Shown here one piece after another: positions 8,583 through 30,870 of a stretch of 64,000 nucleotides of DNA. The position numbers and the translations under genes were made by a program. Source of the DNA: Diadema antillarum. Taxonomy: Eukaryota. Positions within the stretch are counted from its first letter, which is position 1. Each line of letters begins with the position of its first letter. The stretch lies in contig NW_027271040.1 in the NCBI RefSeq assembly GCF_040938485.1, positions 2,046,001-2,110,000 of the forward strand. Reading direction: 5' to 3'. The notes below the pieces were generated by a model. It searched no databases and was not told where the DNA came from. It was given only the letters and a program-made list of their open reading frames with translations.

Positions 8583-8672
8583 ATGAACTTTCATCTGGAG
8601 ATCTCCGTCTGGCTCCAGAAGTTGGAGCTGGAGGAATACGCGCATCTTTTCAAGAGTGTGGCAACCGTCCAG
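8583..8672 (+). CDS. BCAR3: Coding exon 1: N-terminal half of SAM domain (MNFHLEISVWLQKLELEEYAHLFKSVATVQ)
   Basis: Acceptor ctccttttgttgctacAG at 8567-8568 (exon starts 8569), ATG at 8583, donor CAG/GTAAGG at 8673, phase 0. ISVWLxxLxLxEYxxLF is the SAM helix 1-2 pattern. The frame is open back to the acceptor, so the true start could lie upstream. Confidence 0.8.
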
Positions 8673-10792
8673 GTAAGGAGATGCATGTTGAACTGCCTTG
8701 AGCTCTACAGACTTGAGGGGGGCGGGTGGGGCTACGGGGAGCATTGCTGGTCCTTTAGTTTGCAAAATGAAGTGTTGGGCCAATTGGGTTTGTCATAATA
8801 AGGCCAGCAAGTAGCCTCTTATCGTCTGTGTGTTTTTGTGTGGTTGTATCTGTGTCTCCCATGTGGTACCCTAATATGCATGTTTCTTGTCTGTATCCAA
8901 GCATTTTGAATATTAGACCCAGACTGGTGTAATCAACAAGTGATATTGATCAGAAAGATCTAGAGATTTCAATATTGATTATTTTTGTAAGTTGCATGAA
9001 TTTTTGCTTGCTGTCTGTTTGTTTGTTTATTTGTTTCTTTGTTGTGGGAAAGGGTAGAGTATACTCAGGTAAAAGACACAACTATCTGCTGTCATTTGAA
9101 AGTTTCTGCTAGGGTCTACGAATACTGCATCACTCAAGCAATTACTGATTTGTTATGTTATTGAAATCAATCTAGTTTTTGTTTAGCTATTAGTTTCACT
9201 TATGATCAGTTAGCGATATCCTAAAACGAGAGAAAAGCCGCCGTTTTAAAGAAATAATCTCTGAAAGAAAATTATCAGAGCCCACACTGTTTGGCGGCAA
9301 CATGGCGTCATACTGCCTGCTCCCTTTAACCTTCCGCCAGAGCGATATCGAATGCTCCCCGACCAATGACGACGCACATTCGGCGTTCAAATGTCACCGC
9401 CAGTCTGGCTCATGCCGAGGAGATGAGGCAAGCATCCCGATTTGGGCGATGCACTTCGCCTCCTTGGAGAACCGGTCTTTCGCCCTCTCTCCCTTTCCAT
9501 CTCTCCCACTCAAGATGTCTCTCTCATTTTTCTTTTCTCTTCTGGGCCATAATGTGTCTGCACTTTGGTGACAATCCCTTGTATCCCACAAGCCTCGCCA
9601 TTATTCATGTAAAGCGAACAGCTCGGGCGTAATGGATTTTTTGTTGCGGGGAGGTCTTTAGTGACAGATGACTTGTATGTAGAACTTCTAGATGCAAATT
9701 AGCACTCAACTCGGAGGACATGCAGGTAGTTGTCGACCTCCATGTAATATCGTGTGTCTCACATACAATGTACATACGTATATGCATACTGCACACTGCT
9801 TAAGTTTCAATACCACACAATTTTTGTGGTCATTTTTAGTTCCTGATCAAAGACAGAGAATGCATCGTACATTGCAGGATTTAAGTTAGTCTTGATTGAT
9901 TCAATGAAAATCAAACGGAGTGATAAAGGTAAGGATGATCACTGTTATGAATAATTGTTCAATGTCTTTTATTTGTGGTATTTTCTCTCCATTCAGTAAA
10001 TTGCTAAATTGAGGAGTTTTGTGGTGAATCTTTCATTCTCTGGTTGCAAGTATTTTGGTACTGTAAAGTAAGATGTTTTTGTGGCATGAACTTTGCTGTG
10101 TTAAGAGCGGCTCTATCTTTCACCTTGTGCGAAATCTTGTACCATAGCATTCGTGACCATTCCACAATGTGTATGATAGAAATGTCATTCAAATTAGACA
10201 TGAATTAGCAATGAAAGGAATTTCTGAATTCTACAATTCTTTTTTTCACAGAGCGTTGATGCGAGTTGCAATCACATAAATGAGGTGGGCCTATGTCCTA
10301 CATTAAAGTGTGGACAATTGATATGATATGATATCACCCTCTCACAATTCTTCCATTGGCTTTTACTACATTTCCATTTCTAGAATGATTTTTAAAAGTG
10401 TTATGCAGGTGACTCTCATATTAAATAATGAAGTCCTCGGACTGGCAGTTTTCTTTTGTTATATTGAAATTTAGTTATAACCAACAGTAAAGTATGTAAA
10501 TAGATATAGATGATAATATTATTATTACCCATCTCTTATTCTCTGTACATTAAGGATGGATGTGTGTGTGTGTGTGTGTGTGTGTGTCTGCCAACAAAAA
10601 AAGCTAAGGTATGTCTTTATTACATTATTGATATAAATGATTTGCATTTGATGATTTTTTGAAAAAACAATAAAACAATAGACGCTTTAAGTCTGTCATA
10701 TTTGGTATTTTATTCTCACATGAAATAAGACATACACTGCTGTCTGCTTTTATGCAGCATCAACTTTAACCTTTGGTAATTTCTACCGTTAA

Positions 10793-11262
10793 AGGGTGTG
10801 TACAGTTCTGGTCGAGGTGAGGATTTAGCTTTTAACGTTTTGCGAGATATTCAGAAACCACTCTATGAGATGTCAAAGAGCATGCAATTCATTCATTCAT
10901 TCATTCATTCATTTATTTTTCATTTCCAACAAAAACATATAAATATATTACAAAAATTGAATACAGTGCATAAATTTCATCATACAAAGTAAAGGATAAA
11001 TTTACAGAAAACTTGTAGGTATAGGAAAATGTTGGAAATGGGGAGGAATGCTAAAAAGCTGAGCTTGTAGGCTGCATTCCCCCCACACGTAATACAAGAA
11101 ATTATATGATCGATAGACTGATAAGCATTGAGAATGGATGAAACAAAGAAACTAAGACAAAAAGACCTATAACCTAACTTATCCGAAACAAAAACCCTGA
11201 ACAAATCCCTACACTACACTAAGTCGCTGTCATGCCGGAAAAAAGAGGAGAGAAACAAAATA

Positions 11263-11301
<39 letters not shown>

Positions 11302-28842: not shown

Positions 28843-28874
<32 letters not shown>

Positions 28875-29997
28875 TGCGTGTGTGTTGGGGGGAGGGGGTG
28901 CACTTCGGGGCTACTGTCTGGGACCCCGTACAGGATAAAATAACTGGCTTTAGTGTTTTGGATATTTCTGATGAGTATGCCTACTACTTCCAATTGCAAA
29001 AGAAAGTAGCCATGACCCTTTTCAGCTGAATAAAATCAATGTGTGTGTGTGTGTGGGGGGGGGGGGAGGGAGCAATTTGGGGCTACTGACTGGGGCCCCG
29101 TGCAGGATAAAATAGCTGGCTTTGGTGTTTTTGGATATCTCTGATGGGTACTACTTCCATTGCAAAAGAATAGCCGTGACTCTTTTCAGCTGAATTAAAC
29201 TAATGTGTGTGTGTGTGGGGGGGGGGGGGGGGGGAGCTCCTTTGGGGCTACTGTCCGGGGCCCCGTACTGGATAACATAGCTGGCTTTGGTGTTCTTGGT
29301 ATCTCTGATGGGTACTACTTCCATTGCAAATGAAATTAGCCGTGACTCTTCTCAGCTGCACGATTGAAATCAATGTTTGTGTGTGTTTGTACGTATGACC
29401 TATGGGGGGGGGGGGGCACTTTGGGGCTACTGTCTGGGGCCCCGTACAGGATAAAGTAGCTGGTATTGGTGTTTTGGATATCTCTGATTGGTACTCCTTA
29501 CATTGCAAAAGAAATTAGCCGTGACTCTTTTCAACTGAATAAAATCAATGTTTGTGTGTGTTTGTACGTAGGCCTATGGGGGTGGGGCCCTTTGGGGCTA
29601 CTGTCTGGGGCCCCGTATTGGATAAAATAGCTGGCATTGGTGTTTTGGATATCTCTGATGGGAACTACTTCCATTGCAAAAGAAATTAGCCGTGACCCTT
29701 TTCAGCTGAGTAACACCATATTTGTGGGGCCCTTTGGGGCTACTGTCTGGGGCCCCGTACAGGATAAAATAGCTGGCATTGCTGTTTTCATGATAAGTAC
29801 ACCCAAAGGAACAATATCCACCAACTTTTGTCCGTGACCCCCTTCGGCTGAATAAATCCATTTTTCGGGGTCCCTTTTTGTGGTCCCTAGCCTTACGGTA
29901 CAGGATGTGACTTGCCAGCAATTCATTTTATTGACCCTTGGACACATCCTTATATGATGAGACCATTAAAAAGTGTGACCCTTTTCAGCTGAATAAA
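28050..29997 (-). repeat. Right arm tandem array: 9 clear plus 2-3 decayed units, inverted relative to the left arm
   Basis: gtgacccttttcagctgaataaa-type markers at ~28595, 28808, 29012, 29176, 29342, 29521, 29692, 29834 and 29974, with degenerate copies at ~28055 and ~28335. Spacers are (TG)n plus poly-G. Confidence 0.9.
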
Positions 29998-30746
29998 TCT
30001 TCTGGGCCCCCGGTCTACATGTCCCCAGCTCTCAAAGTTACATTCACCCCCCTCTCCCCCCCCCCCCCCCAAGTTTGCAACGTTCTGAAGTAAGAGTCTG
30101 CATGAATGCGTGGAAGGTGAACTTGCGATACACGGATGAACGCAAGACCCCTAGGTGGGCCCTAGGTGGGATCTTGTTTTCAGGTGTGATGTGAATACAA
30201 TGCAGTTTTGATTATATATGTTTGTTTGTCCTTGCAGATCTGTCTGCTTGACTCTTTGACAGTATCAAATACTTTTGTGTGAAGGAATGTATCACAGCAT
30301 ACAAACTAATGTGTAATCTCTGCCCCATATCTGTGTGTTCCAGAAGATTAACTGTTTTGCAGAAGGCAGCAGTCTAAAGTGCATTCCTACACAAGTACCT
30401 CTGTCTAGCCTTACCCAACACTGCAAACAATGAAGGGATTTCCAAAGGGCTCACAATAGAAAGGCCAGATGAGTGTAACAATGCTGTTTTGCATTGCAGT
30501 GGTCCTTGGTATGGTGGTATAGGGGTAAAATGTGCTTTAGTAACTGTCAGTCTAAGTCTGTGTTCTGGTTGAGCTGCATGATGTATGGATGTTGTCACAG
30601 CTCGGTGTTATTTATATAATTTTCTAGTCAAAGCTCAGCACTGTTTATGAATTATTCTGGTCAGCCACTAGAGCCGAGTGACATTTGCATAATTTTGGGC
30701 CCTATTCTGATTGTGTGTGTTTGTATGCTGCCCCTCGTCTGTACAG

Positions 30747-30870
30747 GATTTACTGCACTGGAGCGAGAAAGATCTGCTGGACATCGGAATACGCAATGGT
30801 GCGCACCGCGCCAGATTGGCATCCAACCTCGTCTTCATTCGGGAAAAGCTGAAAAGGACTAGCATAGCTG
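30747..30870 (+). CDS. BCAR3: Coding exon 2: C-terminal half of SAM domain (DLLHWSEKDLLDIGIRNGAHRARLASNLVFIREKLKRTSIA)
   Basis: Acceptor cccctcgtctgtacAG, donor CTG/GTAAGG at 30871. Starts phase 0, ends phase 1. LLxxSExDLxxIGIxxxxHRxRL is the SAM helix 3-5 signature. Confidence 0.85.

What the first reader, a model, noticed from the sequence alone, without database searches (positions are those of the whole stretch)
8583..30870. NSP-family (BCAR3/SH2D3C) adaptor carrying an N-terminal SAM domain
Seen: exons 8583-8672 and 30747-30870 join in phase 0 into a complete SAM domain that splices in frame to the SH2-RasGEF-like body. Known: vertebrate NSP1/SH2D3A, BCAR3 and SH2D3C/SHEP1 have SH2 plus Cdc25-like domains but no SAM. 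SHEP1 was found as an Eph-receptor SH2 partner, and Eph receptors bind partners such as SHIP2 and Odin through SAM-SAM contacts. Inference: this invertebrate protein may dock on receptors in two ways (SAM-SAM plus SH2-pTyr), or may self-oligomerise to cluster p130Cas. The architecture could be ancestral and lost in vertebrates, or a lineage-specific fusion. I cannot tell whether automated annotations already record it.
Basis: partly seen in the sequence, partly recalled or inferred. Interest (0 to 1): 0.7.

Follow-up and report, generated by a model that had tools for sequence, protein, structure and literature searches.

The report
Sea-urchin BCAR3-type adaptor with SAM domain
The window holds a sea-urchin BCAR3/SH2D3C-type signalling adaptor whose first two coding exons really do encode a SAM domain, but the same SAM-SH2-Cdc25-like layout is already annotated in animals from priapulids to birds, so it is an old, ordinary feature and not a new architecture.

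Summary
Exons 8583-8672 and 30747-30870 have consensus splice sites and match complementary halves of Pfam SAM_1. They align without gaps to the continuous SAM of orthologues. It ends in an SH2 domain and an NSP-type Cdc25-like domain that matches solved SH2D3C and BCAR3 structures. A spliced transcript contig from a roughly 90%-identical relative joins exon 3 to 4, 4 to 5 and 5 to 6. Junctions 8672/30747 and 30870/33601 rest on orthologues only.

The novelty claim fails. NCBI already annotates SAM+SH2+RasGEF in another sea urchin (Lytechinus variegatus, colinear with this window). It also annotates it in starfish, sea cucumber, crinoid, chelicerates, insects, a millipede, krill, molluscs, a nemertean, a brachiopod, an annelid, a priapulid and a hagfish, and in BCAR3 isoform X1 of birds, turtles, a crocodilian and a lizard. 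The layout is therefore ancestral to Bilateria and was not lost in all vertebrates. Many species are annotated with both a SAM-bearing and a SAM-less form.

I found no paper describing the SAM form, so its function is untested. Both assembly gaps lie in introns and hide no coding exon.

The parts
8569..8672 (+). Exon E1. The acceptor AG lies at 8567-8568, the ATG at 8583 and the donor after 8672. It encodes the first SAM half (helices 1-2). The frame stays open upstream of the ATG through the acceptor, and 'GSPTR' before the Met is conserved in Lytechinus variegatus.
13414..13543 (.). Assembly gap (130 N) inside intron 1. No coding exon is expected in it. Continuity of the DNA across it was not tested.
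30747..30870 (+). Exon E2, the second SAM half (helices 3-5). It ends in phase 1.
33601..33706 (+). Exon E3, a Pro/Ser-rich linker. It is 63% identical to L. variegatus aa 109-145. Its last 30 nt appear as the loose end of a spliced transcript contig that is joined to E4.
33857..34036 (.). Assembly gap inside intron 3. The transcript contig joins E3 directly to E4, so no exon is hidden here.
39071..39098 (+). Exon E4 (28 nt, peptide SIPEDQLSR), conserved in L. variegatus and starfish. The splice to E5 is seen in a transcript contig.
40060..41538 (+). Exon E5 (493 codons). It holds the SH2 domain at about 40177-40419 with its FLVRDS arginine, then a long low-complexity region and the start of the Cdc25-like domain. 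The conserved internal Met at 40087 is the start of the SAM-less Lytechinus pictus model.
44856..44956 (+). Exon E6, part of the Cdc25-like domain. The splice from E5 is seen as a loose end of a transcript contig.
49628..49796 (+). Exon E7, part of the Cdc25-like domain.
50477..51022 (+). Exon E8 with the stop codon at 51020-51022. It is the C-terminal part of the Cdc25-like domain and matches solved SH2D3C (3T6G) and BCAR3 (3T6A). It contains the Cas-binding helix.

Best explanation
The window carries the sea-urchin orthologue of the single invertebrate BCAR3/SH2D3C (NSP-family) adaptor gene. It has eight coding exons over 42 kb. The long product reads SAM (E1+E2), Pro/Ser linker (E3-E4), SH2 (E5), a long disordered region, and a Cdc25-like domain (E5-E8). 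This layout is the ancestral bilaterian form of the family, not a fusion special to this lineage.

Shown here: the domains, the exon phases, colinearity with annotated orthologues, and the E3-E4-E5-E6 splices in a relative's transcript.

Inferred from what is established for mammalian NSP proteins: the SH2 binds phosphotyrosine partners, and the closed, non-catalytic Cdc25-like domain binds the C-terminal domain of a Cas-family protein.

Inferred for the SAM: it is an extra docking module that does not depend on phosphorylation. It would make head-to-tail SAM-SAM contacts, with itself or with another SAM protein, and so add a localisation or clustering input to the NSP-Cas module. It is present only in the long form. 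A SAM-less form that starts at the conserved Met about 30 residues before the SH2 (40087 here) is annotated in many phyla, which suggests an alternative promoter decides whether the SAM is included. I put about 0.9 on identity, architecture and ancestry, and about 0.4 on the SAM mechanism as worded.
For: Pfam halves of SAM_1 in E1 and E2, and SH2 at E 1.9e-16. Colinear tblastn of L. variegatus P0407 (SAM_1 35.4 bits, SH2, RasGEF) and of Patiria, Apostichopus, Anneissia and tick proteins over E1-E8. Near gap-free 39-row SAM alignment across phyla. AlphaFold model of the L. variegatus SAM: pLDDT 85, five helices, TM 0.79/0.86 to the EphA4 SAM 1B0X. E8 against 3T6G at 3.7e-26 and 3T6A at 5.4e-22. 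Transcript contig with the joint 39096/40058, a loose end equal to the end of E3, and a second contig whose loose end equals the start of E6. An echinoderm SAM profile against 1.84 billion representatives: every long protein with a single N-terminal SAM at 57 bits or more (24 clusters) carries an NSP-type SH2; 22 also match the Cdc25-like body, while P0196 (a second Tachypleus locus, 'uncharacterized') and P0247 (Ixodes, named Nup214) match the SH2 only. Their taxa span Ecdysozoa, Spiralia, echinoderms and a hagfish. Sauropsid BCAR3 isoform X1. Uninterrupted SAM+SH2+RasGEF ORF on a 2934-nt Logan transcript contig. SAM-bearing and SAM-less isoforms of one gene in beetle, brachiopod, tick, oyster and mosquito and in Lytechinus.
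Against: The splices 8672/30747 and 30870/33601 were not seen in reads of this or any urchin species. The only run offered is a relative held as contigs, and only 30 letters of its upstream part were shown. The true N-terminus is open: L. variegatus has 39 further residues from an upstream exon that I could not find in 1-8568. In urchin, starfish and sea cucumber the arginine equivalent to BCAR3 R748, needed together with L744 for Cas binding, is histidine, so Cas binding is assumed and not shown. No experiment on any NSP SAM was found. The isoform evidence rests largely on automated gene models.
Confidence: 0.88

Rival explanations
1. The SAM exons belong to a separate small upstream gene, and models that join them to the SH2 body are read-through or prediction artefacts.
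For: Some annotations do call SAM-only mini-proteins that best match the NSP SAM profile: Apostichopus PIK37612.1, Diabrotica balteata CAG9830776.1, Timema CAD7207332.1 and a 106-aa Tachypleus 'ephrin type-A receptor 2-like'. The Lytechinus pictus model lacks the SAM. E1-E2-E3 splicing was not observed directly here.
Against: Short Logan contigs of 2.4-3.4 kb each encode SAM+SH2+RasGEF proteins of 706-893 aa, and one was read and shows a single uninterrupted ORF. E2 ends in phase 1, E3 in phase 2 and E4 restores phase 0 into E5. The linker motifs 'RYS-S/T-IPE' and 'PPSP..KM' span the E3/E4 and E4/E5 junctions in continuous orthologue proteins. The relative's contig has 335 nt upstream of E4, which equals E3 106 + E2 124 + E1 104 + 1.
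Confidence: 0.04
2. One reading: SAM+SH2+Cdc25-like is an unrecorded, invertebrate- or echinoderm-specific architecture that is absent from vertebrates.
For: The characterised mammalian BCAR3, SH2D3C and SH2D3A forms have no SAM (established knowledge). No mammalian, amphibian or fish full-length SAM form was retrieved. No paper describing it was found.
Against: It is annotated in L. variegatus, four other echinoderm classes, many protostome phyla, a hagfish and sauropsid BCAR3 X1.
Confidence: 0.02
3. A scaffolding error at the N run 13414-13543 puts E1 in the wrong place. E1 is a real part of the gene, but its distance, order or copy in this assembly is wrong.
For: The gap lies between E1 and E2, and no DNA reads of this genome were available.
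Against: E1 lies on the same strand, upstream of E2, as the gene requires. It is the only match to that part of the orthologues in the window. Large first introns are usual for this gene.
Confidence: 0.05
4. Mechanistic rival: the SAM does not recruit partners. Instead it folds back on the SH2 or Cdc25-like domain as an autoinhibitory cap, or it binds RNA or lipid as a few SAM domains do.
For: SAM functions are diverse. A Vts1 RNA-binding SAM is among the structural neighbours. Isoform-specific inclusion would suit a regulatory cap.
Against: The nearest sequence and structure neighbours are the protein-binding SAMs of Eph receptors, SHIP2, Caskin and ANKS1. The domain is separated from the SH2 by a roughly 100-residue disordered linker of variable length.
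Confidence: 0.1

Closest known systems
Lytechinus variegatus 'breast cancer anti-estrogen resistance protein 3 homolog' XP_041482113.1 (P0407, 1000 aa)
   Same: It is the orthologue. It has SAM_1, SH2 and RasGEF, is colinear with all window exons (65% E1, 82% E2, 63% E3, 62-86% for the rest) and breaks at the same exon positions.
   Different: It has 39 further N-terminal residues from an upstream exon not found in the window, and a roughly 60-75-residue insertion in the disordered region.
Echinoderm SAM-bearing NSP models: Patiria, Acanthaster, Asterias, Apostichopus, Anneissia
   Same: They have the same architecture. The starfish proteins start at the same Met as window 8583, and the SAM is split at the same residue.
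   Different: Body identity is 38-45%. The crinoid and one holothurian transcript have longer N-termini.
Sauropsid BCAR3 isoform X1 (for example Passer domesticus P0123, 895 aa) and the hagfish BCAR3 homologue P0269
   Same: They have an N-terminal SAM with the same family signature (WL..LGL..Y, GVEDLL, LG..N..HR), followed by SH2 and the Cdc25-like domain.
   Different: The SAM is 35-38% identical to the urchin type. In amniotes it is an isoform-specific addition of 70 residues in front of the canonical 825-aa protein.
Characterised mammalian NSP proteins: BCAR3/AND-34, SH2D3C/SHEP1, SH2D3A/NSP1
   Same: They share the SH2 with the FLVR arginine and the closed Cdc25-like domain that binds Cas. 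L744 is conserved, and E8 matches 3T6A/3T6G.
   Different: The studied forms have no SAM. The R748 equivalent is His in the urchin, and the urchin domain has a roughly 20-residue insertion.
SAM domains of the Eph network: EphA2/EphA4, SHIP2, ANKS1A (Odin), ANKS1B, Caskin
   Same: These are the closest solved SAMs by profile (EphA2-SHIP2 57.7 bits, Caskin-2 44.7) and by fold (1B0X, TM 0.79/0.86).
   Different: Identity is only 15-30%. NSP SAMs form their own conserved group. No binding data exist.

Membership tests
NSP family (BCAR3/SH2D3C/SH2D3A) | An SH2 domain with the phosphotyrosine-binding arginine (FLVR motif), placed N-terminal to the Cdc25-like domain | tested here: met
   Pfam SH2 60.4 bits, E 1.9e-16, in E5. 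The FLVRDS motif is present. The role of the arginine is taken from PMC8266394.
NSP family (BCAR3/SH2D3C/SH2D3A) | A C-terminal Cdc25-homology domain of the NSP type | tested here: met
   E8 matches only SH2D3C 3T6G (3.7e-26) and BCAR3 3T6A (5.4e-22) in the PDB. Orthologues score Pfam RasGEF 45-58 bits.
NSP family (BCAR3/SH2D3C/SH2D3A) | Cas-binding interface residues (BCAR3 L744 and R748) | tested here: inconclusive
   Leu is conserved. Arg is replaced by His in urchin, starfish and sea cucumber, and is Arg in crinoid, protostomes and vertebrates. The mutant data come from PMC8266394.
NSP family (BCAR3/SH2D3C/SH2D3A) | Closed conformation without exchange activity | not testable with these tools
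   This needs a structure of the whole domain or a GEF assay.
SAM domain (Pfam SAM_1, PF00536) | A sequence match over the whole domain | tested here: met
   E1 covers profile positions 8-25 (15.5 bits) and E2 covers 34-60 (18.6 bits). Each half alone is below the 23-bit cut-off, but they are complementary. The joined domain was not scanned, by rule. The orthologues score 35-47 bits.
SAM domain (Pfam SAM_1, PF00536) | A five-helix SAM fold | tested here: met
   Tested on the L. variegatus orthologue (67% and 83% identical to E1 and E2 in alignment A5). Mean pLDDT is 85, with helices at 9-15, 19-25, 31-34, 39-45 and 50-73. The 50 best matches shown are SAM domains or SAM-containing entries; the best is 1B0X with TM 0.79/0.86.
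Polymerising or Eph-binding SAMs | Functional mid-loop and end-helix surfaces, self-association, or binding to an Eph SAM | not tested
   There is only a general resemblance: an acidic helix 2-4 region and a basic helix 5.

The most novel reading that the evidence does not exclude
The SAM-bearing long form is the ancestral bilaterian NSP adaptor and is still made in sauropsids and hagfish. Whether the SAM is included is set by an alternative promoter that is conserved from priapulids to birds. Mammalian work used only SAM-less proteins, so a whole input to the NSP-Cas module has gone unstudied. That input would be SAM-SAM docking, for example to Eph-type SAM partners, or self-clustering.
Probability: 0.3. 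Interest if true: 0.5.

Novelty: already known. Interest (0 to 1): 0.22.

Why it matters
For this genome the result is a sound gene model: eight coding exons, two of them 10 and 32 kb upstream of the main exon. Gene predictors can miss such exons or split them off, as the SAM-less Lytechinus pictus model and several SAM-only mini-models in other species show. For the field, the survey corrects a common picture. NSP adaptors are described as SH2 plus Cdc25-like proteins, yet across Bilateria, and in non-mammalian vertebrate BCAR3, the long form starts with a conserved SAM domain. I found no paper that discusses this. It is a cheap and testable lead for laboratories working on Cas/BCAR3 or Eph signalling, but it is not a discovery of a new kind of protein.

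Tried and rejected
1. A word search with the Patiria SAM (residues 1-72) found only starfish. Its sensitivity was too low, so the result says nothing.
2. RNA evidence in this species: only one coded run was offered, with a 0.07 word share. It proved to be a roughly 90%-identical relative held as contigs.
3. The search for the upstream coding exon seen in L. variegatus (aa 1-34) in window 1-8568 gave only chance-level hits.
4. Pfam scans of ten long intronic or flanking ORFs on both strands found nothing.
5. An Rfam gathering scan of the whole window found no family.
6. Three literature searches for a SAM domain in BCAR3, SH2D3C or NSP proteins found no paper describing it.
7. I considered a lineage-specific fusion, a separate SAM gene and chance ORFs, and rejected all three on the orthologue and transcript evidence.
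Full report
**Observation**

The two exons are real. 8583-8672 begins with ATG 14 nt behind an acceptor (ctacag|) and ends CAG|gtaagg. 30747-30870 lies between tgtacag| and G|gtaagg. In Pfam the first exon matches SAM_1 profile positions 8-25 (15.5 bits) and the second matches positions 34-60 (18.6 bits). These are the two complementary halves of one 64-position domain. 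Each half alone is below the 23-bit cut-off.

**Gene model**

I read the remaining exons from the sequence and checked them by tblastn of homologues:
- E3 33601-33706
- E4 39071-39098
- E5 40060-41538
- E6 44856-44956
- E7 49628-49796
- E8 50477-51019, followed by TGA

All junctions are GT-AG. Each exon translates without a stop in the frame that the phases require. The split codons read GGT, AGC and CGA. E5 carries an SH2 domain (E 1.9e-16) with the FLVRDS arginine. In the PDB, E8 matches only the Cdc25-like domains of SH2D3C (3T6G, 3.7e-26) and BCAR3 (3T6A, 5.4e-22).

**Assembly gaps**

There are three N runs in the window. 13414-13543 lies in intron 1 and 33857-34036 in intron 3. 56638-56811 lies beyond the gene. 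Frame is therefore not at issue. The question is whether an exon is hidden or the scaffold is misjoined. Orthologous proteins pass from E1 into E2 without extra residues, and a transcript contig passes from E3 directly into E4. No coding exon is missing. Physical continuity across 13414-13543 could not be tested because no DNA run of this genome was offered. The only support is that E1 lies on the right strand and in the right order. No N was filled in.

**Which organism and which gene**

The best hit of E5 is the Lytechinus pictus 'BCAR3 homolog' (71% identity), so the window comes from another sea urchin. The same 90% cluster holds the L. variegatus model XP_041482113.1 (P0407, 1000 aa). That model has SAM_1 (residues 48-96, 35.4 bits), SH2 and RasGEF. 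It is colinear with the window: aa 30-69 on 8553-8672 (65%), 68-111 on E2 (82%), 109-145 on E3 (63%), and then E5-E8 at 62-86%. E4 is too short for a tblastn hit, but its peptide SIPEDQLSR recurs as SIPEDQLSK in the printed N-terminus of P0407. Starfish proteins start at the very Met of window 8583, and their residues 30/31 fall at the E1/E2 junction. The linker motifs 'RYS-S/T-IPE' and 'PPSP..KM' span the E3/E4 and E4/E5 junctions in the continuous orthologue proteins.

**Transcript evidence**

Only one run was offered. It is coded X1 and held as contigs, and its RNA label is a guess. I laid it on 38900-41700. One 1715-nt contig differs from the window at 133 of 1354 positions, so it comes from a related species or a divergent haplotype.
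- It skips 961 nt between 39096 and 40058. This is the E4/E5 intron, with the cut offset by two letters.
- Its loose end before 39068 equals the last 30 nt of E3.
- A second contig ends at 41540 with a loose end equal to the start of E6.

The splices E3-E4, E4-E5 and E5-E6 are therefore seen. The first contig holds 335 nt upstream of E4. That equals E3 (106) + E2 (124) + E1 counted from its acceptor (104) + 1. This fits, but I did not see those letters, so 8672/30747 and 30870/33601 remain unobserved in reads.

Independent transcript support for the architecture comes from short Logan contigs. They measure 2.4-3.4 kb and encode SAM+SH2+RasGEF proteins of 706-893 aa. Examples are P0007 (2934 nt), P0069, P0135, P0208 and P0242. 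I read one of them, and it holds a single uninterrupted ORF of 855 residues with SAM+SH2+RasGEF.

**Fold**

I modelled the L. variegatus SAM with AlphaFold, using a 39-row alignment that spans many phyla. Mean pLDDT is 85 and the model has five helices. The 50 best structural matches shown are SAM domains or SAM-containing entries; the best is the EphA4 SAM 1B0X (TM 0.79/0.86, rmsd 1.5). By sequence profile the nearest solved SAMs are the EphA2-SHIP2 fusion, Caskin-1/2, EphA2 and ANKS1A/B.

**Survey**

The first search already showed SAM+SH2+RasGEF in Patiria, Acanthaster, Asterias, Apostichopus, Anneissia and ticks.

I then searched a profile of six echinoderm NSP SAMs against 1.84 billion representatives. 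It gave 722 hits. Among the best 150, every long protein with a single N-terminal SAM at 57 bits or more (24 clusters) also carries an NSP-type SH2. Of these, 22 also match the Cdc25-like body. P0196 (a second Tachypleus locus) and P0247 (an Ixodes model) match the SH2 only. The names of these clusters include:
- Chelicerates: scorpions, horseshoe crab, spider, ticks
- Other arthropods: beetles, mosquitoes, a millipede, krill
- Molluscs: three species
- Other protostomes: a nemertean, Lingula, Owenia, Priapulus
- A vertebrate: the hagfish Myxine

A search with a bird N-terminus showed that BCAR3 isoform X1 carries the SAM as well. These proteins are about 890-898 aa and come from many birds (including emu), turtles, gharial and Anolis. 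The canonical 825-aa protein of a bat aligns from residue 72 of the long bird form, immediately behind the SAM.

Searching the bird and hagfish SAMs back against the 148 other representatives of the best 150 found only NSP proteins among the long ones, apart from one 280-aa protein. It also found a set of unnamed short vertebrate-type SAM proteins.

The architecture is therefore ancestral to Bilateria, is kept in at least cyclostome and sauropsid BCAR3, and is already recorded by automated annotation. I retrieved no mammalian, amphibian or fish full-length SAM form, but these searches cannot prove absence.

**Isoforms**

Within one gene, SAM-bearing and SAM-less models are annotated in Diabrotica/Diorhabda, Lingula, Haemaphysalis, Saccostrea and Wyeomyia. 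The short forms start about 30 residues before the SH2. The L. pictus model does the same, at the Met that corresponds to window 40087. That Met is conserved in all echinoderm sequences aligned. An alternative promoter that decides whether the SAM is included is thus a likely and old feature. This is an inference from gene models.

**Function**

The following is established for mammalian NSP proteins. The SH2 arginine binds phosphotyrosine, and the L744E/R748E mutant of BCAR3 loses Cas binding (PMC8266394). In the urchin the Leu is kept, but the Arg position is His. The same is true in starfish and sea cucumber, whereas crinoid, protostomes and vertebrates have Arg. Cas binding is therefore plausible but not shown.

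For the SAM nothing has been tested anywhere that I could find. My best reading is a SAM-SAM docking or clustering module added to the NSP-Cas complex in an isoform-specific way. It is supported only by general resemblance to Eph-network SAMs.

**N-terminus**

The frame is open upstream of 8583 through the acceptor. The peptide GSPTR before the Met is identical in L. variegatus, whose model continues 34 residues further in an upstream exon. I could not find that exon in 1-8568. The protein may therefore be longer than 880 residues, or both starts may be used.

**Verdict**

The architecture is ordinary, ancestral and already annotated, including in a sea urchin. What remains of interest is that the SAM-bearing form appears never to have been studied.

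Noticed in passing
window 50770-50790 (E8, motif HLQNAH): The arginine equivalent to BCAR3 R748, needed together with L744 for Cas binding, is histidine in urchins, starfish and sea cucumber. It is arginine in crinoid, protostome and vertebrate NSP proteins.
   Followed up: partly
window 50650-50740 (E8): Echinoderm proteins carry a roughly 20-residue insertion in the Cdc25-like domain, between the LLERD motif and the PWE motif, relative to the solved vertebrate structures. Several arthropod proteins carry one too.
   Followed up: partly
window 8460-8582: The reading frame stays open upstream of the ATG at 8583 and through the acceptor at 8568. GSPTR is conserved with L. variegatus, whose protein starts in a further upstream exon. 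That exon was not found in 1-8568.
   Followed up: partly
window 40087-40089: This is a conserved internal Met ('KM') about 30 residues before the SH2. It is the start of the SAM-less Lytechinus pictus model and lies at the equivalent place of the short isoforms in beetle, tick and mosquito.
   Followed up: partly
proteins P0186, P0187, P0191, P0348 (other species): These are SAM-only mini-models. One 106-aa Tachypleus protein is named 'ephrin type-A receptor 2-like'. They match the NSP SAM profile best and look like NSP SAM exons split off by gene predictors. P0247 (Ixodes, named Nup214) carries an NSP-type SAM and SH2 and looks like a chimeric model.
   Followed up: no
proteins P0296, P0300, P0311, P0323 and P0266, P0272, P0293, P0307, P0308: These are unnamed short vertebrate-type SAM proteins in at least two sequence groups (starting MKHLAIS... 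and MKHQSIS...). Two of them continue into a BCAR3-like linker. Their taxa are unknown, so the SAM may be present in more vertebrate groups or paralogues than shown.
   Followed up: partly
An Rfam gathering-threshold scan of the whole window found no family at all.
   Followed up: partly
window 39927-39959 and 39656-39696: Several contigs of run X1 lie on short pieces of intron 4 and have unrelated loose ends on both sides. They are probably dispersed repeats.
   Followed up: no
window 23400-29100 (intron 1): This stretch holds long GT/CA-type microsatellite tracts and repeated units with ORF-like frames on both strands. It is the stretch another reader noted as a foldback element.
   Followed up: no
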